From the NCBI RefSeq assembly GCF_006345805.1, contig NC_043001.1, positions 46,934,001 to 46,998,000 on the forward strand: a DNA stretch of 64,000 nt, written 5' to 3'. This DNA is from Octopus sinensis. Lineage: Eukaryota. Shown in pieces: positions 4,098-45,980 of the stretch. A program made the position numbers and the translations under genes. Each line of letters starts with the position of its first letter. Position 1 is the first letter of the stretch. The notes under the pieces are model-generated. The model did not search any database, had not been told where the DNA came from, and saw nothing but the letters and a program-made list of their open reading frames with translations.

Positions 4098-4236
4098 CAA
4101 AACTGGGAGGTTTGGTATAATGACAACATTAGATTCAGGTCCTGCAGACTTCTCTCTGTCAAAGATGTAGTATTTGTTTTCCCGATATGATACTGTACCA
4201 TTTTCTAGGACAACATCAACCTTTTCAATATGTTCC
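4098..4236 (-). CDS. CD36/SCARB-family coding exon 3
   Basis: Acceptor ttacag|G completes the AA|G Lys codon. Encodes EHIEKVDVVLENGTVSYRENKYYIFDREKSAGPESNVVIIPNLPVL (family NGTVSY and PNL motifs). Donor TTG|GTATGT; 139 nt. Confidence 0.95.
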
Positions 4237-4580: not shown

Positions 4581-4741
4581 TTGTATGTGTATGGGCCAGT
4601 TTCTGTAACTGAAGGGTTTGTCCCATTTTTCTGGATTGCTTCACTGTTGGTGTAGTTGAAGACATATACTTGGAAATATACAGGAATCGGAGGATTGAGC
4701 CAATTATTGAATGACTCTGAATTATTGGTTAAAGGCACTTG
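4581..4741 (-). CDS. CD36/SCARB-family coding exon 2
   Basis: Not in the ORF track; found by manual translation. Acceptor aatcag|, 161 nt, QVPLTNNSESFNNWLNPPIPVYFQVYVFNYTNSEAIQKNGTNPSVTETGPYTY(K), donor AA|GTAGGT, phase 2. Contains the family W..PP.P.Y...Y.FN.TN and GPY.Y motifs. Confidence 0.95.
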
Positions 4742-5202
4742 CTGATTGGATTAGTGCATTAATGGAAGAGAAAATAAAAAGTTTATTTTTGTGAATTGTT
4801 CATTATAAATATACATATGCTATATTACATAGTTTATTTTTGACAAAAAAAAAATGAAAACAGAACACACTCAATGTTTAGTATGTGTATGTATAAATAC
4901 TGGGTTGAAAAATATTCTTGGATGGAAAAAAAAAATCAAAGGCAGCTTTCATTATTTTCTATCCAAAAGGTTTTTTTCAACCCGATATTTACATGCTATT
5001 ATTTATAGTTTTACATGTACTTTGAATCCAATTCCAGAAAATAATTATTCCACATTCTCTCTCTCTCAAAAAAAAAACAAAACAAAACAAACATCCATCC
5101 ATCCATCCATACATCAGTAGTTCATATATCTGAAAAAGAAGCACTCTAAAACATTAGAGCAGTAATATATTGATAGAAGGGTGATTGTTATGGTTGGTCA
5201 GA

Positions 5203-5262
5203 GAATGACAATTGGTTTCACACCTAAAAAGCACTTAGCTGTATAGGTGACTCATCAGACTC
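5203..5262 (-). ncRNA. Minimal type-I hammerhead ribozyme motif (family A), intact core
   Basis: GAGU-CUGAUGA-GU[CACCUA..UAGGUG]U-GAAA-C-CAAUU-GUC-AUUC. Stem I is GAGU/AUUC; the putative cleavage site is after GUC (between 5207 and 5206). Confidence 0.7.
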
Positions 5263-5331
5263 AAATGAACAGAGGCACATATCCTCCCTACATGTTTTTC
5301 TTCCTCCGTTGTATAGAGATTGTGTGCTTTT

Positions 5332-5391
5332 GAATCTGATGAGTCATCTATACAGCTAAGCGTTTTATAGGTGCCAAACCAATGGTCACTC
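5332..5391 (+). ncRNA. Hammerhead motif (family A), degenerate partner
   Basis: GAAU-CUGAUGA-GU[CAUCUAUA..UAUAGGUG]C-CAAA-C-CAAUG-GUC-ACUC; G12 is absent (CAAA). Confidence 0.55.
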
Positions 5392-5577
5392 TCTGACTGG
5401 CCATAATAATGAACCTTCTAAATATCATCATCATCATCATTGTTGGGTTGGACAGTTTGACCGGGGTCTGGTAAGCTAGGAGGTTGCCAGGAGGCTCCAG
5501 TCTGATCTGGCAGTGTTTCTACAGCTGGATGTTCTTCCTTACACTAACTCAATAGGTCTCCTCAAGCAGTGTGTGTG

Positions 5578-5609
<32 letters not shown>

Positions 5610-6496
5610 ATATATATATCATCATCATCCTTTAACGTCCGCTTTCCATGCTAGCATGGGTTGGATGATTTGACTGAGGACTGGCGAACCAGATGGCTGC
5701 GCCAAGCTCCAATCTGATCTGGCAGAGCTTCCACAGCTGGATGCCCTTCCTAACTCCAACCACATATATACATATATATATATATATATATTGAGACCTT
5801 TGGAGATATGTTGTGCTTGAGAAGACCCAGCAAGCCAAGTGAGACTGTAACCATGGCCTATGCCAGTGCAGCATAACCAGCCTATTTAAGAGGACCCTTC
5901 AATCATTGGGCAATAAACTGTTGAGGCAAGTGAAGTTGTTGTCATGTCCGATGACAGTACTGCCTGATTGGCACCTGTACCGGTGGCACGTAAAAAGCAC
6001 CATTTGAGTGTGGTCGATGCCAGTGCTGCCTGACTGGTCCCATGTTGATGGCACATAAAAAGTACCATTCGAGCATGGTTCTTGCCAGTGCTGCCTGACT
6101 GCCTCCTGTGCCGGTGGCACATAAAAAGCACTATTCAAGCGTGGCCAATGCCAGTACTGCCGGATTGGCCCTTGTGCCGGTGGTATGTAAAAAGCACACA
6201 CTACACTCTTGGAGTGGTTGGCATAAGGAAGGGCATCCAGCTGTAGAAACTTTGCCAGATCGGATTGGAGCCTGGTGCAGCCTTCTGGCTTACCAGCCCT
6301 CAGTCAAACCATCCAGCGCATGCCAGCAAAGAAAGAGGACGTTAAATGACAATGACAATGATGATGATATATATATGTATATATTTATATATATATACAT
6401 AGTTAATCCAAACAAGAAAGCACAAAAAAACACAACGCGAGGATGTGGAACAAATATAGTATTATTGGACGCTCAGGAGAGAAGGAAAGAAGGAGG

Positions 6497-6531
6497 GTTT
6501 AACGTTTCGAGTGGAGCTCTTCGTCAGAAAC
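6497..6531 (-). ncRNA. Minimal hammerhead motif (family B) in a Penelope-like short repeat (~6400-6700)
   Basis: GUUU-CUGACGA-A-GAGCUCCACUC-GAAA-CGUU-AAAC. Perfect 4-bp stem I and palindromic AACGUU at stem III. Confidence 0.65.
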
Positions 6532-6702
6532 ATAGGAGAAGGAAAGATCCAGAGAAGGGAAGACAGAGGAAAAAAATCGCCAACGGTACACACGCAGTCA
6601 TATACAGATATATATATCATCATATAAAATACAAAATGGGACAAGAACACAAAACATCCGGATAACTAGGTAATACAAAAAGGGACAACAAAACATACAT
6701 GT

Positions 6703-6735
<33 letters not shown>

Positions 6736-7055
6736 CATACAGTAAATTTGACAAAAAGAATACGAGTTTGCCATGGAGCATGGAAAATCAGATATTTCAG
6801 ATAGAGTCCTTCCTCAGGGAAAAATTGACAGGAGTGAAATTAAAGAGAAACAGAACAGTTTTACATCATCTAAGAAAAACTGGTTGCAGTTGATAAGGAA
6901 CACAAAACCACTGGAGCTTCATACAGAGATGGGAAAGAAGCAGGAGAGTAAAACTGGACCAGTGATATAAAAGGAAAGAGGATGGAATAAGGAGAATAAG
7001 TAGGCAAACACTGCATGTATTTTAAACATTTTCATCATGCATTGGCCCCTTATGT

Positions 7056-7232
7056 GGAGGCGCAATGGCCCAGTGGTTAGGGCAGCGGACTTGCGGTCGG
7101 AGGATTGCGGTTTTGATTCCCAGACTGGGTGTTGTGTGTGTTTATTGAGAGAAAACACCTAAAAACCCCACAAGGCTCCAGCAGGGGGTGGTGGCGACCC
7201 CTATTGTACTCTTTTGCCACAACTTTCTCTAA
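7056..7232 (+). mobile_element. tRNA-derived SINE, 3'-truncated, with 15-bp target-site duplication
   Basis: A box TGGCCCAGTGG and B-box-like GGTTTTGATTCC; CATTGGCCCCTTATG at 7040-7054 and 7233-7247. Confidence 0.85.
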
Positions 7233-7726
7233 CATTGGCCCCTTATGGGTGAGACTGTACAAATAGTCATGGTGCATCATAAGGTGAAGACATGCCTTGT
7301 CAGGTGACTTGTCAACAAGTACCATGTTCTTTAATCACCATTTTGTTTATTTCAATTAGAATACATGCTGGTATACATGTGTTGGAATGAAGAACAGTTT
7401 TCTTAATACATGAAAGGCTTCTTTCAGTTTTTGTCTATCAAATACATTGATTAGAATTTACTTAGCCTGGAGCTATAGTAGAAGACCCTTGCCCATGATG
7501 GCATGCAGTGGGATTGAACCCAAAACCATGAGGTTGTGAAGCAAACTTCTTAACTATACAGCTATGCTTCTCCTGTTAACTTGATGCCATGTGGTGAGCA
7601 TAACTGGAAACTGTAACTCAGGCAACTGAACACAAATGTTCCCATAAGCATGGTTTCCTTTTCTGTGTCCCGAATGATCTCAGAATCTAATCACTCAGTC
7701 TCTGCAAATTGTCATCTTAGTATTAT

Positions 7727-9990
7727 GTGCATGGAATGATGCATTGTCATTCATGTGGATTCTCAGGCCACGCACCAACAATGAGGTTGCACAATACCCC
7801 TGATTTTGTACATTCTGATTGCAATCTGTTTGGCAAACTTCTTGCAGAAAAATGGGTGGAAAAGGTCATAGAGGTAGTTAGGGTCTGTGATAAAGTGCTT
7901 AAACTCAGGCTAGTCTTGTAGAATAGCATAGCTACAATTATCTCTGCCTATGCCCCGCAAGCAGGCCTACCAAATGAACAAAAGGACCACTTTTATGATA
8001 TTCTTCAACAGGCTACCTCAAACACGAGTGACAATGATCTCATTTTTGTACTGGAGATTTTAATGGGCATGTCGGCCAACAACCTGGTATCTTCCATGGT
8101 GTATATGGGAGCCATGGAATTGACACTCTCTGAAGAATGTACCCTCCAGCATAGACTAGTTATTAGTGACTTTAGACTCAAGGCCAGAAGGATGCCAAGA
8201 AGCAGACCAATCTGGAAAAGAAGGATTTGGAAAATTAAGAACCCTTCTCATGGTCAGAGATTTAGGGGCATCCTCATTGAGAAAAAATTGATGAGAGGGA
8301 GGAGGAGCTACAGACTTGTGACATAAAAGGCAACTGGGAATTCCTGCGAGACAGCTTGCTGAGTGTCACAGACCAAATTTGTGGCTGGTAAAAAGTCCCT
8401 TCCAGACCTAGGGTAATGTAGTACTGGAACAATACTGTACTGCCAAAGGTTGACCCAACTGAGGGACCAGCGACCCAAATTAACAGTACCCTGGTAGATA
8501 AAGCAATTAAGGATATGAAGACTGAGAAAGCCCCTGGCCCATCAGGAATCACTGTTGAGATGCTTAAAATATCTGTTGGTGTGGGTCTAGTCACCTATAT
8601 CGTAAATCAGGAAGTTCACGAAGGAGTCATACCCAATGACTAGTGTAGCAGCACCATAGTCAACTGCTACAAAAGTAAAGGGGATGCTTTAGACAGAAAT
8701 AACTACAGAGTTATCAAATTGCTGGATCAGGTGATGAAAGTTATGGAGAGGGTCATAGCCCAAGTGATTAAGGAGAAAGTTATCCTAGATGAGATGCAGT
8801 TTGGTTTTGTGCTAGGTAGAAGCACCACTGATTATCACCACTGTATTTCTGGTAAGGCAACTGCAGAAGAAATACCTAGCCAAAGATAAACCTCTGTACT
8901 TGACTTTTGTTGACTTGGAAAAATCCTTTGACAGGATCTCCCGATCCCTTATCTGGTGGTCAATGCAGAAACTAGGGATAGATGAGTGGTTGGTGAAAGC
9001 CATACAAACCCTGTACAGGGATGCTGTCAGTAAGATGAGGATTGGCAACGAGTATAGTGAAGAATTCCGGGTAGAAGTAGGAGTTCACCTAGGACCAGTC
9101 CTCAGCACCCTCTTATTCATCATAGTCCTCCAGCCAACAACATCTACGCTGATGCCCTTGCTCTAATAGCTGAGTCACTACCAGAACTAGAGATGAAGTT
9201 TCAGGTGTGGAAGCAACGTTTAGAATCGAAGGGCTTTAGAGTCAACCTAGCAAAAACAAAAGTCCTAGTAAGTAGGAAGGCAGACAAATCACAAACCCCT
9301 TCAGGTAGATAGCCCTGCTCAATCTGTAGAAAAGGCATGGGTAGAAACTCTATATGTACCTGATGTAAGCTACGGAGACATAAGAGGTGCAACAATGTAT
9401 GCAGCAGATGCACAGGGGCAATAAACACTGAAGATGTACAGAAAATAGATTCCATCACATGCCAGGGGAAAAAAAACTAGAAGTAGTTGATAGCTTCCAC
9501 AACCTAGGCAACCAAGTCTGTAGTGGTGGGTGGATCCTCTGAGAGCGTAGCTGCTAGAATAAGAATACCCTGGGCAAAGTTCAGAAAGTTCCTACCTCTG
9601 CTAGTGACAAAGGGCCTCTCACTCAGAATGAAAGGTAGACTGTATGATGCATTTGTGCAAACTGCCATGCTACATGGCAGTGAAGCATAGGCCATGACTG
9701 CTGAAGACATGTGTAGACTTCAAAGAAATTAAGCTAGTAGACTTCAAAGAAATTAAGCTGGATGCATAATATCAGTGAGCATACATGACAGAGTGTAAGT
9801 GTCCTAAGAGAAAAGTTGGACATAAGAAGCATCAGATGTAGTGTGCAAGAGAGACAACTGCACTGGTATTGTCATGTGTTGCATATGGATGAGGACAGCT
9901 GTGTGAAGAAGTGTCACACCCTAACGGTGGAAGGAACCTGTGGAAGAGTTAGACCCGAGGAGCACCATCCGAATGTGGTTGATGCTAGTG
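7727..9990 (+). mobile_element. RTE-clade LINE, degenerate (APE endonuclease + RT remnants)
   Basis: Fragments WVEKVIEVVRVCDKVLKLRLVL, IISAYAPQAGL, KAPGPSGIT, FVDLEKSFDRI..SLIWWSM, EEFRVEVGVHLGPVLS and RQLHWYCHVLHMDEDSCVKKC; many stops and frameshifts. Confidence 0.88.
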
Positions 9991-10194
9991 CACCCTAACT
10001 GGCTCCCATGCTGGTGGCACGTAAAAAGCACTCACTACACTCTTGGAGTGGTTGGTGTTAGGAAGGGCATCCAGCAGTAGAAACGTTGCCAGATCAGTTT
10101 GAAGCCTGGTGCTGTCTACTGGCTTGCTAGCATGGAAAGCAGACGTTAAACGATGATGAAGATAATAATAGATGAATGGATCGGTGGAGATATA

Positions 10195-10229
<35 letters not shown>

Positions 10230-10319
10230 TGGGAGCATACAGCATCAGAACTTGAAAATATACCACTAGAATTCTAGAGTTACTACATGTACATGTACCA
10301 AGGATCTGATGTCACACTT

Positions 10320-11150
10320 GAGCTATTTAATAACTTGAAATTCTTTGGATACAACAACCCACTCCCAAATGACATAGCTAAGGACATTAGAAAGTTAAGA
10401 GTTGCTAAAAATGTCATTGTACTTATTTTCTGATAAGATATGTACAAAGTTAATACTAATAAGTTTAATCAGCTAGTAATTAGTGTCACTAATAAGTACC
10501 AGAAAATTACTGATAAAACATATAACTCTACAAATAAATAAGCTAAGGCAATTGCAAAAACAGAAAAAAATCCATATAGATAACAGAGATGAGTTCTTAG
10601 CTAAATGTGAAGTAACTATAACATTAAGGGATCATAGTGCCAAGTTGATAAACAAGCCAAATTATAGGTTAATTAACCACATTAGAATTAAGTTAGAACT
10701 AACCACTAAAAAATATTCAAGAGACATAAAAATTAAGAAAAATATCAATCTACAACAATGGACCAATAGTACCTCAGAACTATCATGGATTAGGAATATT
10801 ACAAATAAGTTTCATGTTGGGTTTGCTCAAATTAATATTTTAGTTTTTTACTCTTCAATAGCTTGATCCCTGTAAATTAAAGCGTTAAGTTGTAAATGCA
10901 ATTTCACCAGCATTTTATTTGTAGAGTTATATGTCTTATTGGTAAAGTGATAATGTACGCACACAAGAGTGTGCTCTTCAGAAGCAGAGTGGCTTGGGAA
11001 CAAAAAAAGTTTGACTGCTGATCTATTTCTTGTCCTAATGGGATCATATGACTATGCTGACACATATGACTTAATCAGCTCATATACATTAGACCTCTTA
11101 AAATACAAATTACTAAATGCAATGTCTAGCTATACCAAGATGATGGTTTA
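10320..11150 (+). mobile_element. Penelope-like element RT remnant
   Basis: NKPNYRLINHIRIKL...INLQQWTNSTSELSWIRNI...FAQINILVFYSSI resembles the PLE RT N-terminus (RLINP.KSE...NQW.NT..V..WF...FD...FYPSI). Confidence 0.65.
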
Positions 11151-11186
11151 GTGGTGTCACATATATGCAAAAGCCATGCTTTAGAC

Positions 11187-12420
11187 CAGTGATTCTCAAA
11201 CTTTTCAAAAAATTTTACATGCCGGTCCCCTTACAGATTTTCAGATGATTCACAGTCCCCTATAAAATGCAGTATAATTAACATTAAAAAATTACATTCG
11301 TGTACTGTATTTTACGGACTATGAACCATACTGTCCATAAACCCGCAACCCTGAAAACCACAGCTTAATTCACACAATAGCCCATTAGGGTACCGTAAAT
11401 ACACATGAAAATATGGGGAATCAATTCTCATTTGGTCACAAAACAAATGAGAAAAGAAAACAGTCTGAAAATATCCCCAGCATCCTGTATTAACTGTGTA
11501 AGACCCATTTATGCCTATTTGGCAGAAAGAAACCACAGGTCATACACCAAAAATTACAGTGGTTCTCAAGTTTTTGACATCACCTTCCCCTTTCACCATG
11601 TTTTGGATGTTATTCTTCCCCATTGGCAGGTCATTCCTCATATTGATTATCCAAGAAGTGCACTTCAACCAATTTAGCTATTTTCGGCAGAAGAATTGCA
11701 ATAGCATCCCAAAATGTATAGAAGTTTCTGCCAGTTGGACCACTAGTATGCACAGAAAACCACAATTTTAGTAGAAACATTGTCTTCTTCACCTCTCATG
11801 AAGGTTTACCATCCCTTTTACTTGAATCCCAGATACATAACATGACATAAAAAAAAATTATATAAGAAATTATTAATTCACAAAAACAGATCATCTGTCA
11901 TTTTATTTACAGTAAAGTTTAGTGTGATGGATGTACTTGCTTTGCAGTCACCAGCTCTTCTGTATTTGGCTCTGTTTTGGAGAGGGCAACCCTCATATCT
12001 GGTGTGACACACAGTCAATTTTGTAACTTTGTTTTGATGGCAAGGAGAGTGGAAAACACAGTCTCACACTCATAGGTGGTTGGAAATGGCATCAGTACTT
12101 TAAGAGTCATCTTTGTGACATCAAGATATGACTGTGTCATTTCAATCCAAAAGTCAGAACAGCACAGTTCATGGAAAAAAAAAAAATTTGAACTGCCATC
12201 ATTAACCAAATCAATGAACTGCTTTTGAATTAAATTGTTTTCTGTAGACAGATTGCTAACAGAGAGTACAAATGGGTTCCTGATAAAGTGTCAGTATTTG
12301 TCAAAGTCATGAAGATCATGAAAATAAAAAGATATTTCCCTGCCAAGTATTGACATATGTTGTTTCATGAGTTCAACGATATTGTCATCGACTTGAAGCT
12401 TGTTTTCATCGATAGTGACT
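11187..12420 (-). mobile_element. hAT (Charlie/Buster-type) transposon 3' remnant
   Basis: TLKVLMPFPTTYECETVFSTLLAIKTK is the hAT dimerization motif (12015-12209). A CAGTGATTCTCAAA TIR-like end lies at ~11187. Confidence 0.75.
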
Positions 12421-13278
12421 TTTGCTACAGCCTCGGGCTGACCAAAGCCTTGTGAGTGAATTTAGTAGACAGAAACTGAAAGAAGATCATTGTATGTGTG
12501 TGTGCGTGTGTGTGTATTTGCGTTTGTTCCCCCCACCACCACCATTTGACAACCAATGTCGGTGTGGTTACATCCCTGTAACTTAATGGCTTGTCAAAAT
12601 AGACCAATAGGGTTTTACTAGGCCTACAAAGAATAAGTCCTGGGGTCGATTTGTCTGACTAATGGCAGTGCTCCAGCATGGCGACAGTCAAGTGACTGAA
12701 GCAAGTAATTGTATTAAATTATGGCTATTATTTTAAAACAAGTTTAAGAATAACAGCAGAACATTCACCGGTAGAATGATTCAGTATTAAGACTAGACAC
12801 AAATTTATCGTAAAGTTCAAGTTGACTCGGACAGGTTGAATAAACTGATTAGTGAAACTTGAAGTCAACTTGAACTTTGCAATATGTGTGTGTGAGTGTG
12901 TGTGTATGTGTGTGTATCTATCTATCTATCTATCTATCTATATATCATCATCATCATTTAGCGTCCGCTTTCCATGCTAGCATGGGTTGGACGGTTCAAC
13001 TGGGGTCTGGGAAGCCAGAAGGCTGCACCAGGCCCAGTCTGATCTGGCAGTGTTTCTACGGCTGGATACCTTTCCTAACGCCAACCACTCCATGAGTGTA
13101 GTGGGTGCTTTTTACGTGCCAGACGGAGCTGGCAAACAGCCACGGTCGGATAGAGTTTTTTATGTGCCACCAGCACGGGGGCCAGGCGAGGCTGGCAATG
13201 GCCACGATTGGATGGTGCTTTTTACATACATATACACACACACACATACATATATCTATAGTAATAAAGATAATATTC

Positions 13279-13628
13279 GATGGATGGAATTTATAATTTT
13301 AATTCATCGCTGTATGCATTTCCACAAATCACAAGTTTCTTACAATTATAGCCTGTATTCCTGAGATGGTTACAGTGTGTAGTATCCATAGACATTGGGT
13401 GGATTAAATTCCTGCAGTCATTTCTTCAAAGGATATGACTCAGGCATTCATTTACCCAGGCCATATCGCCTGAGAAAATATACACATCAATATGATCCAT
13501 CCGATGTCCATAGATATGATGGACTGTACTGCAATCATTCCAACAATATGGACTATGATCACAAGAAACATGTGATTTGTGGAAATGAACGTAGTGATGC
13601 ATTAAAATATTTATAAATTCCATCCATG
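13279..13628. repeat. Long imperfect inverted repeat (foldback/MITE-like)
   Basis: Arms of ~140 bp (ATGGATGGAATTTATAA...CATTTCCACAAATCACA(A/T)GTTTCTT...) around a ~80-bp spacer. Confidence 0.8.
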
Positions 13629-14710
13629 ATAATTATTACCACATTATATTGGCACAGCTCGGCAGAACCCCTAAAATCTGCTATTCCCAGCTAGTATCAT
13701 TAGGCTGTAGCTAGGATAATAAACTAGGAACTTTTATATGCATATTCAAAAACATTTCCCATAAACAAACTTAAAGAATACATATATCAATATATATATG
13801 TGTATATATATACATATAAAGCGCTCTCTCTCTCTATATATATATATAGTACAAAGGTAGGGGTTATGAATGTAACCCACTATGGGATATCAATTATCCA
13901 ATATACTGTTGGTAAAGTACCCAAATTCTTAATACATAAATGAAACAGCTGTAAGAAGTAGTTTATGAATTTCAATAATTTATAATATGACTTTTAAAAT
14001 ATGTATTTGTATTATTTTTATTATTATATTACCTATTGATTTATATAATGTTTTGTTTGCTTTTGATGTTCTCATTTGTATACTTAATAAATAATGTAAA
14101 ATTGTAATATCCGTAAGTTGATGAACGAGATGAATTTGATTCTCTATTTTCTTATTTGTATTATATATATATATATATATATATACTAGCTGATGTACCT
14201 AGTAATTCCCAGGAAAGCAGGGCTTATCCCTTGGTTCCATCCATTCTCATAATTGTTTCGCTGATCCAATAATAACAATACAATAAGTTATGAATACCCA
14301 AATTGTGAAGTCAGTTATGTAATAACATGAAATCAGTTACCCAGTCATAAGAATTCAAGTAAAGTAGCCCTGAAAAGGGCTTTTGTGTGTTCCCAGAGAA
14401 TATTACCCTCAGTGGTGCTAGTGTTGGTATATTTGTGAATAAGTCACTAACCGAAATAAGTGGATCTATTGTTTAGGAAAATACTATTTACTTGTTTAAG
14501 TGTTGTGCTGGATAAATTGCGAAAATAACTCTAACATTTCAAATACTAAGAAATAAGCATACTCAATTTGATTTATACCAAATGATTTAGGAAACTGAAT
14601 GGATTAGTTCCCTTGGCTATACATACATATATACATACATACATACATATATACATACATACATATACATACATATATATATACATACATACATACATAT
14701 ATATATATAT

Positions 14711-15013
14711 ATGCCGTTTTTACTTTTTCGTTTCTCGTTGAGTTCTACGTCTATTTGTGGTGTCCTGTACACACGTATATATATTTATATATGCATGTAT
14801 ATATACATGTAGATGTAGGTACATACATATATGTTTGTATATATGCATATATGTTAATTATTACACTATTGTATGACTGAGTGCCCTCGCGTCGATTCGA
14901 TTTGTTTGGTTTCGTTTCTTCTTCTTCTCTAAGCTGGTTTTTATATATAATTATGATGCGAAACTCTATAACTCCTTCTTCTCTCTCTCTTTCACCCTCT
15001 TTGGCTTCCTTCC

Positions 15014-15050
<37 letters not shown>

Positions 15051-15642
15051 TCCTCATCTCTCACACAGCTGGATCGACGAACTTCCTTTCCTTGGCGGCC
15101 TTCTTCAAGTAAACATGTTTCTTCTTGCGCTCGTGAAAAAATTTTTTTCCTCGTCTAGGCTTATAGGCCCTCATTATTTGTTTTCCTGTCCTGTTTCTAC
15201 CCCTTCTTGTACTGTATTTTTTGTAATTGTATTTATATTTTGTATTTGTTTTTAATTGTATTGGTTTTACGTCCTGTTTTTGTCACAATTTTTTTTTTCC
15301 TTGTTTTTACACCTCTGCAAAGGAATTTTATTTAATTCTTTCGCAGGAAGGACTAGTTCAACGAGATGTGTTCTGTCCTCACCTTCGAAACACGCTGGAG
15401 TTGAACTAGGGACAGCTGATGAAAGGGATTTTTCCTTGTGTAGTTGTCTTGTACTCTGTTTTTTCGTTGTTAAAAAAATGGTCCGTTCCATGCCGTTTTT
15501 ACTTTGTCGTTGAGTTCTACGTCTATTTGTGGTGTCCTGTACACACGTATATATATTTATATATGCATGTATATATACATGTAGATGTAGGTACATACAT
15601 ATATGTTTGTATGTATGCATATATTTTAATTATTACACTATT
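14711..15642. mobile_element. ~930-bp element bounded by ~160-bp direct repeats (Penelope pseudo-LTR-like)
   Basis: Near-identical direct repeats 14711-14870 and 15490-15642. The interior minus strand has a weak resemblance to the PLE C-terminus (ISLDEEK.F...). Confidence 0.55.
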
Positions 15643-16289
15643 ATATATATATATATACATATATAAGCAATAAGATATAAAGAGGTGATGCTTCAATTTA
15701 AGTAACTAATTCAACTGACTCTCAATTATATATATATATATATATATATATCATCATCATCATCATCGTTTAGCATCCGTTTTCCATGCTAGCATGGGTT
15801 GGACGGTTCTACTGGGGTCTGTGAAGCCAGAAGGCTTCATCAGGCCCAGTCAAATCTGGCAGTGTTTCTACGGCTGGATGCCCTTCCTAACGCCAACCAC
15901 TCCGTGAGTGTAGTGGGTTCTTTTTACGTGCCACCCGCACAGGTGCCAGACAGAGCTGGCAAACAGCCACGAACGGATGGTGCTTTTTATGTGCCACCGG
16001 CACGAGGGCCAGTCGAGGCTGGCAACGGACACATATATATATATATATGAGAAAACATGTTCAAAAAGAACAATTCAAACTTTCTGTGGGATCCAAAAAG
16101 AGAGAATAGGTGATTTCTAATAAGGATTCATGAAAAACAGCCAAAACGGGTAATAAGAATATGAAAATAATATTTGAGGAGATTCGTTATAGAATCTACT
16201 GTATTTGAACATTTTACTATCACTGAAGATAACAAGTATTTTGCGTCAAAGAATATATGATAGTGAAGATAGTGATAATGAGGATACTG

Positions 16290-16620
16290 AAAACTTTGTA
16301 GCAGCAAAATAAGTACTTATAGTGGTTCTGATAAAAAATGCTCCTTCAAGAGCAAGTAATTTGAAAAGACATTTAGAGTGCTTTCATCTAAAAGTCTTAG
16401 AAAAAGTAAATGAAAAGGATGAAACAAGTGTAAAAGGCCCAAGTGCACAAGAAGCAAAGCCAAGTACTTCAACTTCAGTCAGTGGAATATCAACTGCAAA
16501 GCAAACAAGTGTCACAAGGTTCTTTACTTCTGACAAAATAACGATAACAAGGACTGCAGAAACATTTAGGAAGTGTCTTATTGATTTAGTTGTAAAAAAA
16601 GATAAGGAATGGAAGATAAG
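16290..16620 (+). mobile_element. hAT transposase N-terminal (BED-finger) remnant
   Basis: SNLKRHLECFH followed by KQTSVTRFFTSDKITIT...FRKCLIDLVV. Confidence 0.6.
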
Positions 16621-17699
16621 GTACAATTGATAACCGAGGCTAAAACTATATTACAAGTATCTATGAAAAACTAATTAAAAAATATGTTAAAATTACAGAT
16701 GTTTATTACTAAAAATGTCTGAAAAAATGGAAAAATTGCTTTTCATTACATTCGCTTAACTTTTGTTGTTGGAGGAATGGCAGTGTCTTACTACACCTGA
16801 AGTAGTTGACTATTTTGGCATTTTGCAGGAATTCTTTCCTGAATCCCCACAAAGATAGGCTTGGGTGTAGCTAAGCGGTAAGAAGTTTGCTTCCCAGCCA
16901 CATGGTTATGGGTGCAATCCATCTGCATGGTACCTTATGCAAGTGGTTTCTACTGTAGTCTCAGGCTGACCAAAGCCTTGTGTGTAGATTTAATAGACAG
17001 AAACTGAAAGAAGTCCATTGTATATACGGGTTTGTCCCCCACCACCACTTGACAACTGGTGTTACTGTGTTTACATCCCCAAAACATAGTGGTTTAGCAA
17101 AAGAGACCGTAGAATAAGTATCAGGTTTATAAAAAAAGATAAATAAGCACTGGGGTCAATTTGTTTAACTAAAATTCTTCAAGGTCAATACCAACTAAAA
17201 TTCTTCAAGGCTGCAACCATTATGACTGAAACAAGTAAAAGATAAGATGAAGATATGACAATTTTGATGTTTGTTTAAAACCTTAGGTGTAACTAGATGA
17301 CTGGACATTATGAAACAGTCAGAGCTATTAAAAATGAATATAGAAGAAAAGCCAGAATGAAAATGAGACCCCCCCACTACAAAAAAAATAATAATTTAAA
17401 CACCAAGTAGGTAAAGCTGCAATATGCTGTCTTAACAGAAGCACTGGGGAGTTTTGGCAAAACAAGAAGCTCCAGGCTTTGGTTTTGGTGTATTTGAAGG
17501 TCATCTACTATCAACTTTACTTAAAAGAATATCAACCCTTTACGATTTAAACTGGCCAAATTCAGCTGAAATATTCTACTTGTTTTATGTTCAAACTGGC
17601 CAGATATGGCCTCTCACCCCTATCCTATAATGTCATTCTAAAAATATACAATTGCATCATCAAAATCTCAAACCTAAGCATTACATTTGATAAAATAAT

Positions 17700-18650
17700 C
17701 TGAAGGGTTAAAGAACTCAGAGAAAATTGATCTGATAAGATTGCACACAATGAATCAGAAGTGAAAGGTTTGTGTGAAGATTTCACCTCAAATTATTCTG
17801 ACACTTCCACATTACTACAAAGAAATTTTCAGATGGAACAAGTGGTAGTACATCTTTGAGATGAACTGATAAATGTAGAACAAAAGTTCTAAATCAACTC
17901 CATGGCTGCTTGGTAATCCATTTACACAAGACCCATTTCAATACATTGTAGAAAGGTTCATGTAAATGTCAGAATTAGTGAACAGTTTTGAAATTGATGT
18001 GGACAGTATTAAACTTATGATATCATTTTACAAAGGTGATACTGACCAGAAATTAGTAAACAAGTGTTATCTAAAGGAATATCTGCACCTTAGAAAATTT
18101 CAGGACACATAAGAAAAGATGTCAAAAATGCAATGTGCAGAATTTTTTCAGCTTATTTGTAAGCAACACCTAGTTAAACAGTTCCCTAATATTGGTTTCA
18201 AATTTTAGCACAAGGCAACCAATTTTGAGGGAAGGTGTAAGTCAAACACATCAACCTCAGTGCTCAACTGGTACTTGTTTTATTGACCCCGAAAAAATGA
18301 AAGGCTAAGTTGACATTGGCAGAATTTGAGTCCAGAATGTAAAAGACAGACGAAATGTCACATGTCACTGAGAATTTTGCCTGGCATAGTAACGATTCTG
18401 TTAGCTTTACCGCCTTAGAGTTACCTAATATTACTCATATGTTTAAAGTGTACTTGACAATATCTATCATGAATTGAGAAATAGGAAAAAAAATTTTTCA
18501 GACCTATCCTTTATAAAGAACAAGTGTCAATCATGACTGAAAAGCACTTAAATTCTTTATGTACAGTGTCTCCAGAAAATGATATGAGGATTTCTTACAA
18601 CAAAACTGTGAGTGAATATGTTGCTAGAAACAAAGAGTATATTGTAAAAT
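17700..18650 (+). mobile_element. hAT transposase C-terminal remnant split by a SINE (~18190-18415)
   Basis: Degenerate ...VKQFPN / MTEKHLNSLCTVSPENDMRISYNKTVSEYVARNK, like the M.QERL..L...SIE C-terminal motif. Confidence 0.55.
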
Positions 18651-19541
18651 ATGCTTTCATATAGCATGTACTATTTCATGGGATGTATGTTAAATAGTGT
18701 TAATGGTGTAATATAAGTAAACAAATAGTGACGTTCTAATCTTTTGCGTGTACAATTTCATATCCTATGTCATTTTCCCAAGATCCTCTTTCATTTGATG
18801 AAGATATTTTAAACTCGTTGCATTTATAATCTTTCTGATGTCTAATAATGGTTATCGATGTGTACGAGCCTTTTCTCAAACATATTTCAAATGTATTTGC
18901 GAGGAACTGAAAAAGCAAATTTCACTTTGTCATACTTTTTTTGCCCCGCCTAAATTTGTGTTTTGCATGCTCAAAGAGATCAAAGATAATTTTCTGAAAT
19001 AGTGTTCTGAATATGCTTTAGTGTTTCTAATGCATTTAGAAAAGGTCATTTGCTTAGCTGATATAGTTTTTGTAAAGTATTGAACATTTGCAAAGAAAAA
19101 AATAACGAAAGAAATTTTTCTTAAAGTAAAAAATGTAGTAAATATTACTCATTATGCCCCACCCATCCCTACCCAAAACCTGAGATTGCTCCCACCACAA
19201 AAATATAAACACTCTAAAGTAGCTAAAAAATTATAAAATAGCCAACCGTAATTTATGCCATATTTTCCCAGCATTTTCATTCAAGTTAGTTGACAAGCCT
19301 GAAGGAGTGACTTCACCTGGTTATATAGGTGATCAAACGAGAAATACTGAATATAACTCTCTAAAAGTGTTCCTGAGGAGAGATGTCTAGCAACCCAAAA
19401 CTTTTGTCTCGCAGTTTCCCCAAGTTCCGACTAGTAGGTATTTGTATACAAAGTAGGATAATCTAGATCGGTGAAATACAGTCTATTACTATGCATATTA
19501 TTTACATTTGACGGACATTTGTCCTCATCTTGTTTGCTGTT

Positions 19542-19587
19542 AACACAACGTTTCGACTTATATACACACCAGCCTTCATCAGATATC
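19542..19587 (-). ncRNA. Minimal hammerhead motif (family C), intact core
   Basis: GAUAU-CUGAUGA-A-GGCU(GGUGUGUAUAUA)AGUC-GAAA-CGUU-GUGUU; stem I has G-U wobbles. Confidence 0.6.
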
Positions 19588-19899
19588 TTGGGGAAGATTT
19601 CGAACCTGGGTTCTCATTCCTAAGGTATTTTTCGATGTTATTATTATTATTATTATTATGGCATTCCTTCGATATAACTCGACAAAATCAAAACATTTCC
19701 CTTCGGGTATTTCCGTAGCTTATGGAGTATAGATATAATGAAATTATACCAGCAATATCTCATTTTAATGCATCCTTGCATATTTGTTCTTACCTGTTTC
19801 AGTCGAGTTATATCGAAAGAATGCCATTATTATTGTTATTATTCAGGTCACATCGAAAAATACCTTAGGAATGAGAACCCAGGTTCGAAATCTCCCCAA

Positions 19900-19947
19900 G
19901 ACACCTGATGAAGGCTGGAGGGTATATCAGTCTAAACGTTAGGTGTT
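19900..19947 (+). ncRNA. Hammerhead motif (family C), degenerate partner
   Basis: GACAC-CUGAUGA-A-GGCUG(GAGGGUAUAU)CAGUC-UAAA-CGUU-AG-GUGUU; G12>U plus a 2-nt insertion. Confidence 0.5.
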
Positions 19948-21082
19948 AATAACAAACAAGGTGAGGACAAATACCCGTCAAATGTAAATAATTCCTCATC
20001 TCTTAAATATAGAACTGTATTATTATTATTATGCATGTTCTAACGATTGCACAGCTGATCATATAAGCAGGCCACACGTTACCCTGTAAATGCATTTCAA
20101 GGAGTAGCCTCGTATATTTTCGAATAAGAACGTAAACAAGCCTGATTACTTCTACAGTGAATTCGATTGCTATTTCTTTGTGGACAAGAAGTTTTCGAGA
20201 TCGATCGCGATTGAGGAGTCGAAAGTCTATTAAAGAAAGTATTACTGATATTTCCTTTGAAAGAATATTTCGACTCGTTGATCTTGGGGGGTCTCTTCTG
20301 GGTCGTCACGCCCAGAGTGACAAATAGCATTACTTGTAGCAAATAGGTTATGTCACTACTCTAATAGATCAAACTATATATATACAGTTATTTAATCGAT
20401 CGAAAGTATTACTATTCCCTTTGAAAGAATATTTTAACTCGTTGATGTCGAGGGTCTCTTCTGGGTCATTTCAAACGTTTGAAACGTTAATGCTTTTCTG
20501 TTTTTTAAGAAAACCTAATGACTTTTGTGCTTGCCTTGTATTCTAACATACTTTTTCTATTCGTTTAAGTTTACAACAATAATATAGAGTGCCTTTCCGA
20601 ACGGTCATCCTGTTCTTTACATGGAGGCTGTAACATTAGGGAGAATTGGCAGTTATTTCCAGCATATCTGATGTCTCCATAAAGGCTCTCTCACGAGTTC
20701 AACGTACACAACAAATGGGTGTGTTAGAGCATGGATGAGACTACAATATATTCGTAAACACAGACACTCACAAAGACACACAAAGACAAACAAACACTCA
20801 CAGAGCCAGTAAAACAAAAAGAGAAAGGCAGGTAGCAAAATAATTTAAACATAAAATGGATTGAGTAACAGACGAGAGAGAAAATGGAAAGAATAGATTA
20901 ATTGAAAGGCAGTCGAGGAAAACAATGATAAAGATAAAACCGAGAGTTCGATAAATATACAAAACAGCGAAAGAATCAGAACGGTAGGACATACAGAATC
21001 GAGGGTGTATGATTACGAGAGGCTTAACGAGGAGTAGAGATGTATATGATAGATGAAGGAGAGAAACAGAATATATACTCAC

Positions 21083-21196
21083 ATCATCGATTTTCTTTCG
21101 TAATATATAGCTAAAAAGTGGGAACATACCACCACCAATTGCCGCTATAACGAACCCTGAAACAAGTAATCCTATTATTGGTTTGGTAAACAACAT
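21083..21196 (-). CDS. CD36/SCARB-family scavenger receptor class B, coding exon 1 (N-terminal TM helix)
   Basis: ATG at 21196-21194 encodes MLFTKPIIGLLVSGFVIAAIGGGMFPLFSYILRKKIDD (38 codons). A short tail, a Gly-rich hydrophobic helix and a basic end match the CD36 family N-terminus. Donor GAT|GTGAGT, phase 0. Confidence 0.88.
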
Positions 21197-33129: not shown

Positions 33130-33575
33130 AAAATGTGATACCTCTGTTATCAAAAGCATGCAGTTGAGAATTCAGAGCAGACAGGTAGACATCCTGTTTG
33201 AAGGAAAAATGATCATGTTCTAAAAAAATTCTTTTGTATGGCCAACAAGTACAGGGATATTGCAGTAAAGAAAGACCCATTGTTAGGTATAAGGCTAACT
33301 TGAAGCAATCACTAAAATCTCTAGAGCTTAATTTGACATCTTGGGAAAGTCATTGCCTCGACTGGTCTGCATGGCATAAAATGTGACATGATGCCATAAA
33401 ACAATTTTTCAGTTGAAGAAACAGAACAATAAAAGAGTTATATCCTGCAATCAACAGACAAATTTGTTCAATTCCAGGCAAAATCAAAATCATCAGTGTT
33501 CCTATTGTGACTTCACACTTGGACTCAAACTACTTCATACCTGGACTCAAATTACTTCATACCTGGACTCAAGTT
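33130..33575 (+). mobile_element. LINE 3' remnant ending in a 22-bp x3 tandem repeat
   Basis: Degenerate SWESHCLDWSAWHKM peptide; ACTTCATACCTGGACTCAAATT-like unit three times at 33510-33575. Confidence 0.45.
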
Positions 33576-37616: not shown

Positions 37617-37661
<45 letters not shown>

Positions 37662-37936
37662 TATATGTATATATATCATCATCATCATCATCGTTTAACG
37701 TCTGCTTTCCATGCTAGCATGGGTTGGACGATTTGACTGAGGTCTGGCGAACCAGATGGCTGCACCGGGCTCCAATCTGATCTGGCAGAGTTTCTACAGC
37801 TGGATGCATTTCTTAACGTCAACCACTCTGAGAGTGTAGTAGGTGCTTTTAAGTGCCACCGGCATGAGGGCCAGTCAGGCGGTACTGGCAACGGCCACAC
37901 TCAAATGGTGGTTTTTATGTGCCACCTGCACAGGAA

Positions 37937-37971
<35 letters not shown>

Positions 37972-40500: not shown

Positions 40501-40900
40501 TATCATCATCATCATCATTTTGCATCCGCTTCCCATGCTAGCATGGGTTGGACGGTTCAACTGGGGTCTGGGAAGCCAGAAGGCTGCACCAGGCCCAGTC
40601 TGATCTGGCAATGTTTCTACGGCTGGATGCCCTTCCTAACGCCAACCACTCCATGAGTGTAGTGGGTGCTTTTTATGTGCCACCAGCACTGGTGCCAGAC
40701 GGGGCTGGCAAACGGCCATGGTCGGATGGTGCTTTTTACGTGCCACCGGCACTGGGGCTAGGCCAGGCTGGCAACGGCCACGATCGGATGGTGCTTTTTA
40801 CGTGCCACCGGCACGGAGGCCCGTCGGGGCAGCGCTGGCAACGGCCACATTTGGATGGTTCACTTACGTGCCACCGGCACTGGTATCACAGCTACAATTT
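40501..40900 (-). mobile_element. (CAT)n-tailed SINE-like repeat with internal ~45-bp tandem subrepeats (representative copy)
   Basis: CATCATCAT...TCCGCTT(T)CCATGCTAGCATGGGTTGGACG...GTGCTTTTTACGTGCCACCGGCAC. Further copies at ~5620, 5880-6350, 12946, 15752, 37676, 37969, 39290, 42010, 50110 and 53700. Confidence 0.8.
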
Positions 40901-41919: not shown

Positions 41920-41991
41920 ATCTTGTTGGTCTAGGGGCATGATTCTTGCTTTGGGTGCGAGAGGTCCCAGGTTCAAATCCCGGACAAGCCC
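41920..41991 (+). pseudogene. tRNA-Pro(TGG) pseudogene or decayed gene
   Basis: ATCTTGTTGGTCTAGGGGCATGATTCTTGCTTTGGGTGCGAGAGGTCCCAGGTTCAAATCCCGGACAAGCCC. 72 nt, about 7 differences from canonical eukaryotic tRNA-Pro; pairs 1:72 and 2:71 broken, one T-stem mismatch; no encoded CCA; TTTT at 41999-42002. Confidence 0.85.
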
Positions 41992-45820: not shown

Positions 45821-45855
45821 GTTTCTGACGAAGAGCTCTGCTTGAAACGTTAAAT
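45821..45855 (+). ncRNA. Minimal hammerhead motif (family B), second copy (repeat ~45735-45950)
   Basis: GUUU-CUGACGA-A-GAGC(UCU)GCUU-GAAA-CGUU-AAAU. The flanks are the reverse complement of the 6400-6700 repeat. Confidence 0.65.
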
Positions 45856-45945
45856 CTTCCTTCTTTCTTTTTTTTCTTGAGCGTCCAATAACACTATACT
45901 TGTTCCACGTCCTCGTGTTTTCTCTTTTTGTTTTCATGTTTGGAT

Positions 45946-45980
<35 letters not shown>

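What the first reader, a model, noticed from the sequence alone, without database searches (positions are those of the whole stretch)
5203..19947. Hammerhead ribozyme motifs from three unrelated repeat families concentrated in intron 1 of a CD36-family gene
Seen: five CUGANGA-stem II-GAAA-stem III-NUH-stem I motifs within intron 1 (4742-21082), belonging to three different sequence families. Three of them (5203-5262, 6497-6531, 19542-19587) are in the pre-mRNA sense with intact conserved cores. Known: minimal type-I hammerheads with short palindromic stem III occur in Penelope-like elements and are thought to act as dimers. An extra A between A9 and G10.1, seen in families B and C, is a tolerated natural variant. 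Inference: these are PLE-derived, but sense-oriented self-cleavers in one intron could affect splicing or co-transcriptional turnover of this receptor transcript.
Basis: partly seen in the sequence, partly recalled or inferred. Interest (0 to 1): 0.75.

Follow-up and report, generated by a model that had tools for sequence, protein, structure and literature searches.

The report
Decayed retrotransposon hammerhead motifs in octopus intron
The hammerhead-ribozyme-like motifs in the first intron of this octopus CD36-family gene are real, but they are leftovers of short Penelope-type retrotransposon fragments that are common in octopus DNA, and they are very unlikely to cut the gene's RNA.

Summary
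A CD36-family gene lies on the minus strand, and its intron 1 spans 4742-21082. The three pre-mRNA-sense copies keep CUGANGA...GAAA; the two antisense partners have lost G12. This is far above chance: 3 strict hits against 0.02 in shuffles.

They are Penelope-like-element (PLE) type minimal HHRs. Families B and C have the extra A after A9, G10.1-C11.1, the ACGU palindrome instead of helix III, and a 4-5 bp helix I. Families A and C are head-to-head inverted pairs of 5'-truncated tails, a PLE hallmark. Family B is a ~220-nt unit in (TA)n.

The clustering is not special. A sixth, intact copy lies outside the intron at 45821-45855. In 102 kb of unrelated Octopus vulgaris DNA there are four more HHR elements, in sense, antisense and intergenic positions.

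Self-cleavage of the pre-mRNA is unlikely:
- B and C have no helix III and no tandem partner.
- Helix I is worth about 0 kcal/mol.
- A and C are locked in hairpins of -127 and -269 kcal/mol, and the complementary arm is transcribed first.

Verdict: ordinary transposon relics, low interest.

The parts
5203..5262 (-). Family A hammerhead motif in the pre-mRNA sense. Layout: GAGU-CUGAUGA-G(U)CACCUA..UAGGUG-U-GAAA-C[CAAUU]G-UC|AUUC. H17 is C5207. 10.1-11.1 is G.U, helix II has a bulged U, and helix III is 2 bp.
   Evidence: energy of the HHR fold +0.8 against MFE -12.6 kcal/mol
5332..5391 (+). Family A partner arm, antisense to the gene. CUGAUGA is intact and G12 has changed to C (CAAA). Helix III is ACC[AAU]GGU.
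5167..5425 (.). Family A element: a head-to-head inverted pair of two 5'-truncated copies with their 3' ends facing outward. In the sense RNA it folds into one long hairpin.
   Evidence: (74% over 263 nt), (-127.3 kcal/mol, z -14.4)
6497..6531 (-). Family B copy 1 minimal hammerhead in the pre-mRNA sense. Layout: GUUU-CUGACGA-A-GAG[CUCCA]CUC-GAAA-CG-UU|AAAC. H17 is U6501. There is no intramolecular helix III, only the ACGU palindrome.
6395..6606 (-). Family B copy 1 unit, about 215 nt, bounded by (TA)-rich microsatellite on both sides.
19542..19587 (-). Family C minimal hammerhead in the pre-mRNA sense. Layout: GAUAU-CUGAUGA-A-GGCU[12 nt]AGUC-GAAA-CG-UU|GUGUU. H17 is U19547. Helix I is 5 bp, three of them G.U. 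There is a 2-nt indel relative to the partner arm, directly after the cleavage site.
19899..19947 (+). Family C partner arm, antisense to the gene. CUGAUGA is intact and G12 has changed to U (UAAA). Helix I is stronger here (GACACC/GGUGUU).
19497..19992 (.). Family C element: a head-to-head inverted pair with arms 19497-19683 and 19802-19992 (86% identical) and a 118-nt unique centre. It folds into a long hairpin in the sense RNA.
   Evidence: -269.1 kcal/mol, z -31.6
45821..45855 (+). Family B copy 2 minimal hammerhead with an intact core (10.1-11.1 is G.U). It lies outside the CD36 intron. The whole unit, 45747-45971, is 85.5% identical to copy 1.
10504..11189 (+). Degenerate Penelope-like-element ORF remnant (N-terminal and RT region, with stops and frameshifts), antisense to the gene. 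No hammerhead is recognisable beside it.
   Evidence: (tblastn E=2.8e-19)
21083..21196 (-). CD36-family gene exon 1 (ATG to donor).
4581..4741 (-). CD36-family gene exon 2. Intron 1 is 4742-21082.

Best explanation
The motifs are inherited parts of three families of short Penelope-like-element (PLE) derivatives that inserted into a large, transposon-rich intron of an octopus CD36-family gene.

In PLEs a minimal type-I hammerhead sits near the 3' end (in the pseudo-LTR). It is thought to process tandem element transcripts as a double hammerhead, in which the palindromic 15.x/16.x segments of two copies form helix III.

Only dead fragments remain here. Families A and C are head-to-head inverted pairs of 5'-truncated tails, made at integration. 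Family B is a discrete unit of about 220 nt that targets (TA)n.

In the host pre-mRNA the three sense copies are most likely inert passengers:
- B1 and C cannot form helix III alone and have no tandem partner.
- All three have a helix I of about 0 kcal/mol.
- A and C are sequestered in long hairpins whose complementary arm is transcribed first.

The only probable RNA-level consequence is long intronic double-stranded RNA, not self-cleavage.

Shown: sequence, structure, repeat architecture, background occurrence. Inferred: PLE origin, mode of integration, catalytic inertness.
For: - The motifs sit at the stated coordinates and far exceed chance.
- Features that my descriptor did not require match the published PLE min-HHR signature (PMC4209133). 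These are the extra A after A9 in B1, B2 and both C arms; G10.1-C11.1 in B1 and C, with G.U in A and B2 consistent with decay of the C11.1-G12 CpG; and the ACGU palindrome.
- A and C are inverted pairs with 5' ends abutting and 3' ends outward. PMC8557442 describes this for PLEs, together with a (TA)n target bias. PMC4209133 notes dual min-HHRs 100-700 bp apart on opposite strands.
- The same architecture recurs in O. vulgaris: L002 8963-9203 and L003 4436-4744, both flanked by (TA)n.
- Family B has a diverged relative in O. vulgaris (L005 15920-16105). It shares the same ends and (TA)n flanks, and it has one compensatory change in helix I, G-C to C-G.
- A PLE-type ORF remnant lies in the same intron.
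- Inertness: the HHR folds score +0.8, -1.2 and -2.8 kcal/mol against MFEs of -12.6, -5.1 and -3.8. Helix I duplexes are +0.2, +0.6 and 0.0. Double-hammerhead folds score -0.5 and -3.7 against dimer MFEs of -20.5 and -18. The hairpins score -127 and -269 kcal/mol. There are no tandem arrays.
- Published assays: a single min-HHR shows no detectable cleavage, and dimers cleave weakly (PMC4209133; PMC6765202).
Against: - No full-length PLE carrying these exact tails could be retrieved, so PLE ancestry rests on architecture rather than on a physical link to an RT/GIY-YIG ORF.
- Only two or three copies per family were available, so covariation evidence is a single pair.
- Nearest-neighbour energies ignore the tertiary stabilisation of the hammerhead core, and in vivo chaperones could help.
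- All three intact intronic copies are in the sense orientation, and in both inverted pairs it is the sense arm that kept G12. Each has a chance of about 1/4 to 1/8, which is not significant.
- No target-site duplications were identified.
Confidence: 0.75

Rival explanations
1. The sense-oriented hammerheads cleave the nascent CD36-family pre-mRNA, as dimers in trans or as a B1-C heterodimer through their shared ACGU palindrome, and so modulate splicing or transcript turnover.
For: - Three intact cores lie in the sense orientation in one intron.
- B1 and C share GAAACGUU, so a 4-bp intermolecular helix III is formally possible.
- Intronic self-cleaving ribozymes that affect expression are known: CPEB3 (PMC10274809 abstract) and the amniote intronic HHRs cited in PMC7229834.
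- Xenopus retrozymes are mildly depleted from introns.
Against: - B1 and C are 13 kb apart and there is no tandem copy.
- The active folds are about 15-20 kcal/mol less stable than competing dimers.
- A and C are trapped in hairpins, with the complement made first.
- Helix I is about 0 kcal/mol.
- Published min-HHRs are inactive as monomers and weak as dimers.
- Similar motifs occur in other octopus genes in both orientations.
- The cores decay at CpG sites as neutral DNA would.
Confidence: 0.05
2. Families A and C are MITE-like foldback DNA transposons, with terminal inverted repeats moved by a transposase. Their hammerhead-like motif is incidental rather than a PLE inheritance.
For: - The elements are short (260-500 bp) and almost fully palindromic.
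- The O. vulgaris examples have 52-56 nt terminal arms at 98% complementarity, more conserved than the interior.
- A mariner-type transposase ORF lies in the window at 43055-43783.
Against: - Seven to eight different repeat families in about 166 kb carry a full hammerhead motif, against about 0.05 expected by chance.
- They share min-HHR features that the descriptor did not require.
- The motif always sits in the same place relative to the outward-facing ends.
- The unequal arm lengths and unique centre fit two differently 5'-truncated retro-copies.
- No TSD typical of a DNA transposon was seen.
Confidence: 0.08
3. Family B, and possibly C, is a monomeric non-LTR retrozyme or SINE-like non-autonomous element in its own right, mobilised by PLE machinery, rather than a truncated PLE tail.
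For: - B1, B2 and the O. vulgaris relative share the same 5' and 3' ends, which is not expected from random 5' truncation.
- The unit size of about 190-225 nt lies within the retrozyme range (PMC7229834).
- The 2026 preprint derives animal retrozymes from PLE pLTRs and finds dispersed monomers.
- Family C has a 43-nt block, identical in both arms, that contains a B-box-like GGTTCGAAATC.
Against: - There are no tandem copies.
- The hammerhead is the minimal PLE type, without the loop 1 / loop 2 contacts of canonical retrozyme HHRs.
- ARAGORN and Rfam find no tRNA-like head in the intron.
- This reading is largely compatible with the best explanation and differs only in naming.
Confidence: 0.12

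Closest known systems
Minimal hammerhead ribozymes of Penelope-like elements (Cervera & de la Pena 2014, PMC4209133; Lunse et al. 2017 as cited in PMC6765202)
   Same: - Type-I topology with a 4-5 bp open helix I.
- A nucleotide inserted between A9 and G10.1.
- The G10.1-C11.1 pair.
- Helix III reduced to a palindrome (ACGU) that can pair only with a second copy.
- Occurrence as dispersed single motifs and as pairs on opposite strands a few hundred bp apart.
- Many divergent families per genome.
   Different: - No RT/GIY-YIG ORF is attached to these copies.
- Helix II of family B is only 3-4 bp, against 7-8 bp in the Schistosoma families.
- Family A has a small real helix III and lacks the extra nucleotide.
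- Octopus families are not described in the papers I could search.
Metazoan non-LTR retrozymes and Schistosoma Sm-alpha SINE-like elements (PMC7229834; preprint 10.64898/2026.07.22.740005)
   Same: - Short (about 150-450 nt) non-coding, AT-rich units that carry a type-I hammerhead.
- Related to PLE pLTRs.
- Monomer copies are dispersed, and many are intronic (about 43% in Xenopus).
   Different: - Retrozymes are defined by tandem arrays and usually have canonical HHRs with loop-loop contacts.
- Here every copy is solitary or in an inverted pair, and the ribozyme is the minimal type.
Conserved intronic hammerheads of amniotes (Rfam HH9 RF02275, HH10 RF02277) and the intronic CPEB3 HDV-like ribozyme
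   Same: A self-cleaving-ribozyme motif in the sense strand of an intron of a protein-coding gene.
   Different: - Those are single, highly conserved, monomer-active ribozymes with full helices.
- The motifs here are repeat-borne, minimal and decaying.
- They get no Rfam score even at E<=10.

Membership tests
Hammerhead ribozyme, type I | Conserved core C3 U4 G5 A6 N7 G8 A9 | tested here: met
   Present in all six copies, including the two partner arms.
Hammerhead ribozyme, type I | Conserved G12 A13 A14, the A15.1-U16.1 pair, and H17 not G | tested here: met
   Met in 5203-5262(-), 6497-6531(-), 19542-19587(-) and 45821-45855(+). Not met in the partner arms at 5336(+) (CAAA) and 19905(+) (UAAA).
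Hammerhead ribozyme, type I | Three helices around the core within one molecule | tested here: not met
   Families B and C have only A-CG-U with no loop, so no intramolecular helix III is possible. Family A has a 2-bp helix III. Helix I is 4-5 bp at about 0 kcal/mol. The HHR fold is never the MFE.
Hammerhead ribozyme, type I | Match to Rfam hammerhead covariance models | tested here: not met
   No hit at gathering score or at E<=10, even on 0.6-1.5 kb stretches. Control: Rfam also misses four clear O. vulgaris motifs, so this test is weak for the minimal type.
Hammerhead ribozyme, type I | Site-specific self-cleavage after H17 | not testable with these tools
   Needs in vitro transcription or mapping of RNA ends.
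PLE minimal hammerhead (min-HHR) | Unpaired nucleotide between A9 and G10.1 | tested here: met
   An A in B1, B2 and both C arms. Absent in family A.
PLE minimal hammerhead (min-HHR) | G10.1-C11.1 base pair | tested here: met
   G-C in B1 and in both C arms. G.U in B2 and in the family A sense copy, consistent with CpG-to-TpG decay of C11.1-G12. G-C in the A partner arm.
PLE minimal hammerhead (min-HHR) | Palindromic 15.2-16.2 (and loop 3) that allows a double hammerhead | tested here: met
   ACGU in B1, B2 and C. Family A has ACCAAUUGU / ACCAAUGGU, which is near-palindromic.
PLE minimal hammerhead (min-HHR) | Located in the pseudo-LTR / 3' region of an element that encodes RT plus GIY-YIG endonuclease | tested here: inconclusive
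   No ORF adjoins A, B or C. The motif lies 40-105 nt from the outward 3' ends. A and C show the inverted 5'-truncated-copy structure described for PLEs. A separate PLE ORF remnant lies at 10504-11189. No further octopus DNA could be fetched to build consensi.
PLE minimal hammerhead (min-HHR) | Family members show compensatory changes in the helices | tested here: inconclusive
   One compensatory pair: helix I position 4 is G-C in B1 and C-G in the O. vulgaris relative. Too few copies.
Metazoan non-LTR retrozyme | Head-to-tail tandem repeats of about 150-450 bp, each with a hammerhead | tested here: not met
   TRF finds only a 66-nt SINE-internal array and a microsatellite in the intron. The descriptor finds no tandem motifs.
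Conserved intronic hammerheads (HH9/HH10) | Match to RF02275/RF02277 and conservation at orthologous intron positions | tested here: not met
   No Rfam match. Orthologous introns could not be fetched, because the CD36 query found no homologue in the protein collection.
MITE / foldback DNA transposon | Terminal inverted repeats plus a fixed-length target-site duplication | tested here: inconclusive
   Long inverted arms are present. No convincing direct duplication flanks A or C by inspection.

The most novel reading that the evidence does not exclude
B1 (6497-6531) and C (19542-19587) share the GAAACGUU segment. They could pair in cis across 13 kb of the same nascent intron, or with other family transcripts in trans, to form a heterodimeric double hammerhead that cuts the CD36-family pre-mRNA. 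Dispersed PLE relics would then act as a distributed, copy-number-dependent brake on host transcripts. A weaker variant: the A and C hairpins serve as intronic dsRNA substrates for the very active octopus RNA-editing or small-RNA machinery.
Probability: 0.03. Interest if true: 0.65.

Novelty: new member of a known kind. Interest (0 to 1): 0.15.

Why it matters
As it stands this matters little. The finding adds octopus-specific families to the already massive catalogue of PLE-type minimal hammerheads in invertebrate genomes. It also shows that a local cluster of sense-oriented motifs in one intron needs no functional explanation.

Two modest points are useful. First, Rfam hammerhead models miss this whole class, so covariance-model scans undercount ribozyme relics in such genomes. 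Second, head-to-head PLE tail pairs create very stable intronic hairpins in which the hammerhead is masked. That is the more realistic way these insertions could touch host RNA biology.

Tried and rejected
- Rfam at gathering and permissive thresholds on the window and on short sub-stretches gave no hammerhead hit. A control on O. vulgaris loci showed the models are insensitive.
- I tried to find more family copies by pattern scans: IMG/VR for A, B and C and JGI metagenomes for B and C. All returned 0 hits.
- The CD36 N-terminus found no homologue in the protein collection, so I could not fetch the orthologous intron from another species.
- The search for homologous proteins with the PLE-like ORF returned 0 hits. 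The exhaustive representative search then gave 195 relatives.
- Pfam on the three reading frames of 10300-12700 returned nothing.
- Pfam on full-length relatives gave only a weak GIY-YIG hit at E=9e-4. A PDB profile search was uninformative. The PLE label for that ORF therefore rests on motif reading (KDHK..RLINP, YRDDGL, C-terminal ..YIG..) plus that weak hit.
- BLASTN of A, B and C against five O. vulgaris loci found no copies. The B relative was found only by a one-mismatch descriptor scan.
- I asked whether the O. vulgaris B-like unit is the tail of the PLE remnant about 850 nt upstream on the same strand. I rejected this: (TA)n tracts intervene and no C-terminal ORF remnant lies between them.
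- ARAGORN found no tRNA-like head for family C.
- I considered a G12-specific loss pattern in the partner arms. It rests on two cases only, since the third partner arm lacks core 1 altogether, so it is not significant.
- Inspection for target-site duplications was inconclusive.

Full report
**Gene context**

The window carries the 5' end of a CD36-family gene on the minus strand.
- Exon 1 runs 21196..21083 and ends at a GTGAGT donor.
- The next exon starts at 4741, after a CAG acceptor.
- Exons 2 (4741..4581) and 3 (4236..4098) follow with GT/AG borders.
- The joined 138 residues hit Pfam CD36 (PF01130) at E=1.4e-39.

Motifs on the window's minus strand are in the pre-mRNA sense. The organism is an octopus: an ORF from the window's commonest SINE matches only Octopus vulgaris proteins.

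**The observation**

I listed every CUGANGA on both strands. I then wrote a structural descriptor requiring:
- helix I of at least 4 bp;
- CUGANGA, then 0-1 extra nucleotide;
- helix II of at least 3 bp next to GAAA;
- A15.1, a 15.2-16.2 pair, U16.1 and H17 not G.

It returned 6497-6531(-) and 19542-19587(-). With slightly relaxed helices it also returned 5203-5262(-).

The two antisense motifs are the inverted partners of the first and third. They start at 5336(+) and 19905(+), and G12 is replaced by C and U respectively.

In 400 dinucleotide-preserving shuffles of the window, the strict descriptor gives 0.02 hits against 3 observed, and the relaxed one 0.125 against 5.

BLASTN shows no similarity between the three families beyond the motif. 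Rfam reports no hammerhead family at gathering score or at E<=10, even on stretches of 0.6-1.5 kb. It also fails on four clear O. vulgaris motifs, so this negative mainly shows that the models do not cover the minimal type.

**What the elements are**

*Family A* (5167-5425) and *family C* (19497-19992) are inverted repeats. Their arms are 74-81% and 86% identical and surround a unique centre of 70-118 nt. In both, the hammerhead strands point outward. That is, two 5'-truncated copies abut head to head, and the motif lies 40-50 nt from each outer 3' end.

*Family B* is a discrete unit of about 215-225 nt bounded by (TA)-rich microsatellite. A second copy, 85.5% identical and with an intact core, lies at 45747-45971(+), well outside the gene's intron.

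A one-mismatch scan found a diverged B relative in O. vulgaris (L005 15920-16105). It has the same ends, the same internal landmarks (CCTGAGCGT) and (TA)n on both sides. Its helix I carries a compensatory G-C to C-G change, and its core has A6 changed to U.

**Comparison with published PLE hammerheads**

Cervera & de la Pena (PMC4209133) list four features that emerge in PLE min-HHRs without being demanded by the search:
- families with covariation;
- a conserved G10.1-C11.1;
- palindromic 15.2-16.2.

They also note dual motifs 100-700 bp apart on opposite strands.

B1, B2 and both C arms have the extra A. B1 and C have G10.1-C11.1. All B and C copies have ACGU. In B2 and in the family A sense copy, C11.1 is U, as expected from decay of the C11.1-G12 CpG.

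Craig et al. (PMC8557442) describe, for PLEs generally:
- heavy 5' truncation;
- an inverted 5'-truncated copy adjacent to the main copy, forming inverted repeats;
- hammerheads near the 3' ends;
- an insertion bias for microsatellites, including (TA)n.

The same intron also holds a degenerate PLE-type ORF on the plus strand at 10504-11189. An exhaustive HMMER search with ORF 10483-10866 found 195 relatives. Full-length ones (about 720 aa) show KDHK..RLINP, YRDDGL and a C-terminal YIG motif, with a weak Pfam GIY-YIG hit. tblastn maps them to the window at E=2.8e-19. No hammerhead is left beside that remnant.

I could not obtain a full-length element carrying the A, B or C tails. PLE ancestry is therefore strongly suggested by architecture but not physically demonstrated.

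**Is the cluster unusual?**

Five 20-kb O. vulgaris loci were reached through SINE-derived proteins. They contain no A, B or C copies by BLASTN. They do contain four good hammerhead motifs of other families:

| Locus and strand | Features | Position relative to genes |
|---|---|---|
| L002 9020-9099(-) | long helix II, CAUAUG palindrome | antisense in a DTW-domain gene |
| L002 11434-11497(+) | - | intergenic |
| L002 20305-20365(-) | - | sense, within a myotubularin-related gene |
| L003 4600-4663(-) | extra A, G10.1-C11.1, CUGAUCAG palindrome | antisense in a kinase gene |

Two of these sit in (TA)n-flanked foldbacks of the same head-to-head design.

Counting independent insertions with intact cores, intron 1 has 3 in 16.3 kb. 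The rest of the window plus the O. vulgaris sample has 5 in about 150 kb. That is a nominal fivefold excess, Poisson P about 0.02, based on three events and uncorrected for the region having been chosen because of them. Orientation among genic copies is 4 sense to 2 antisense.

At roughly one motif per 20-30 kb, an octopus genome would hold on the order of 10^5 such relics. This fits the 'massive and widespread occurrence' reported in 2014.

**Can the sense copies act on the pre-mRNA?**

B1 and C have no intramolecular helix III, and A has two base pairs. The hammerhead folds compare with the MFE folds as follows:

| Motif | Hammerhead fold (kcal/mol) | MFE (kcal/mol) | Helix I duplex (kcal/mol) |
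|---|---|---|---|
| A | +0.8 | -12.6 | +0.2 |
| B1 | -1.2 | -5.1 | +0.6 |
| C | -2.8 | -3.8 | 0.0 |

- The family C sense copy differs from its partner by a 2-nt indel exactly after the cleavage site, and by two C-to-U changes in the 5' strand of helix I. The partner's helix I is worth -6.5 kcal/mol.
- Properly nested double-hammerhead structures score -0.5 (B1+B1) and -3.7 (C+C) kcal/mol. Alternative dimers score -20.5 and -18.0.
- No tandem partner exists.
- The gene is transcribed from high to low coordinates. For A and C the complementary arm is therefore made first, and the sense RNA folds into single hairpins of -127.3 kcal/mol (z -14.4) and -269.1 kcal/mol (z -31.6) that bury the motif completely.
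- Published tests found no cleavage by single min-HHRs and only weak cleavage by dimers or trimers (PMC6765202).
- In Xenopus, about 43% of retrozyme copies are intronic, with only mild depletion.

Self-cleavage that affects this transcript is therefore improbable. Long intronic dsRNA is the more realistic by-product.

**Verdict**

The sequence observation is correct and non-random. The PLE attribution is well supported. The suggested effect on the host transcript is not supported. The locus is an ordinary example of a known phenomenon and adds octopus-specific families.

Noticed in passing
window 10504-11189 (+), possibly extending to ~12300: Degenerate Penelope-like-element ORF remnant (N-terminal KDHK..RLIN-type motif, HKS.LF, YQDDGL) with stops and frameshifts, antisense to the CD36 gene. 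No hammerhead is recognisable at its 3' side.
   Followed up: yes
window ~9000-9750 (+): Fragment of a non-LTR (LINE-type) reverse transcriptase C-terminal region with stops. The Pfam RVT_1 hit is weak (E=0.0049, below cut-off).
   Followed up: partly
window 43055-43783 (-): Mariner/Tc1-type transposase ORF of 242 aa (Pfam Transposase_1 PF01359, E=1.1e-25).
   Followed up: partly
window 41922-41988 (+): The only Rfam hit at gathering score in the window: a tRNA-like sequence (31.2 bits against a threshold of 29). It lies about 30 nt upstream of a copy of the window's commonest SINE body (42021-42165), so it may be the tRNA-derived head of that SINE.
   Followed up: no
window 5440-5760, 5951-6360, 12920-13081, 15732-15893, 37656-38121, 40502-40642 and others: A very abundant octopus SINE, present in at least 12 copies in the window. 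It has (CAT)n ends and an internal 66-nt tandem array (5951-6197). Its spurious ORFs are annotated as hypothetical proteins in O. vulgaris.
   Followed up: partly
window 60296-60357 (-) and 33453-33500 (-): Two further hammerhead-like candidates with one core mismatch (G12 changed to U, G12 changed to C). The first has an 8-bp helix I and the extra A. They may be decayed copies or AT-rich chance matches.
   Followed up: no
window 19600-19642 and 19843-19885: A 43-nt block is identical in both family C arms, although the arms are only 86% identical overall. It contains a pol III B-box-like GGTTCGAAATC. ARAGORN finds no tRNA-like gene there.
   Followed up: partly
L002 8963-9203 and L003 4436-4744 (Octopus vulgaris): (TA)n-flanked foldback elements carrying hammerhead motifs. 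Their terminal 52-56 nt arms are 98% complementary while the inner arms are about 83%. In L002 the head-to-head junction falls inside the hammerhead, so one arm lacks CUGAUGA.
   Followed up: partly
L005 16953-17576 (-) and 15920-16105 (-) (Octopus vulgaris): A PLE ORF remnant (tblastn E=1.3e-5) lies about 850 nt upstream of a family-B-like hammerhead unit on the same strand. (TA)n tracts intervene and no C-terminal ORF remnant lies between them, so I treated the adjacency as a separate insertion.
   Followed up: partly
C11.1-G12 and the ACGU of helix III in all copies: The conserved C11.1-G12 step and the ACGU palindrome are CpG dinucleotides. Several core or near-core changes are CpG-type transitions: C11.1 to U in B2 and in the family A sense copy, and G12 to A in the L002 partner arm. 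This suggests that methylation-driven decay preferentially inactivates these ribozyme relics.
   Followed up: no
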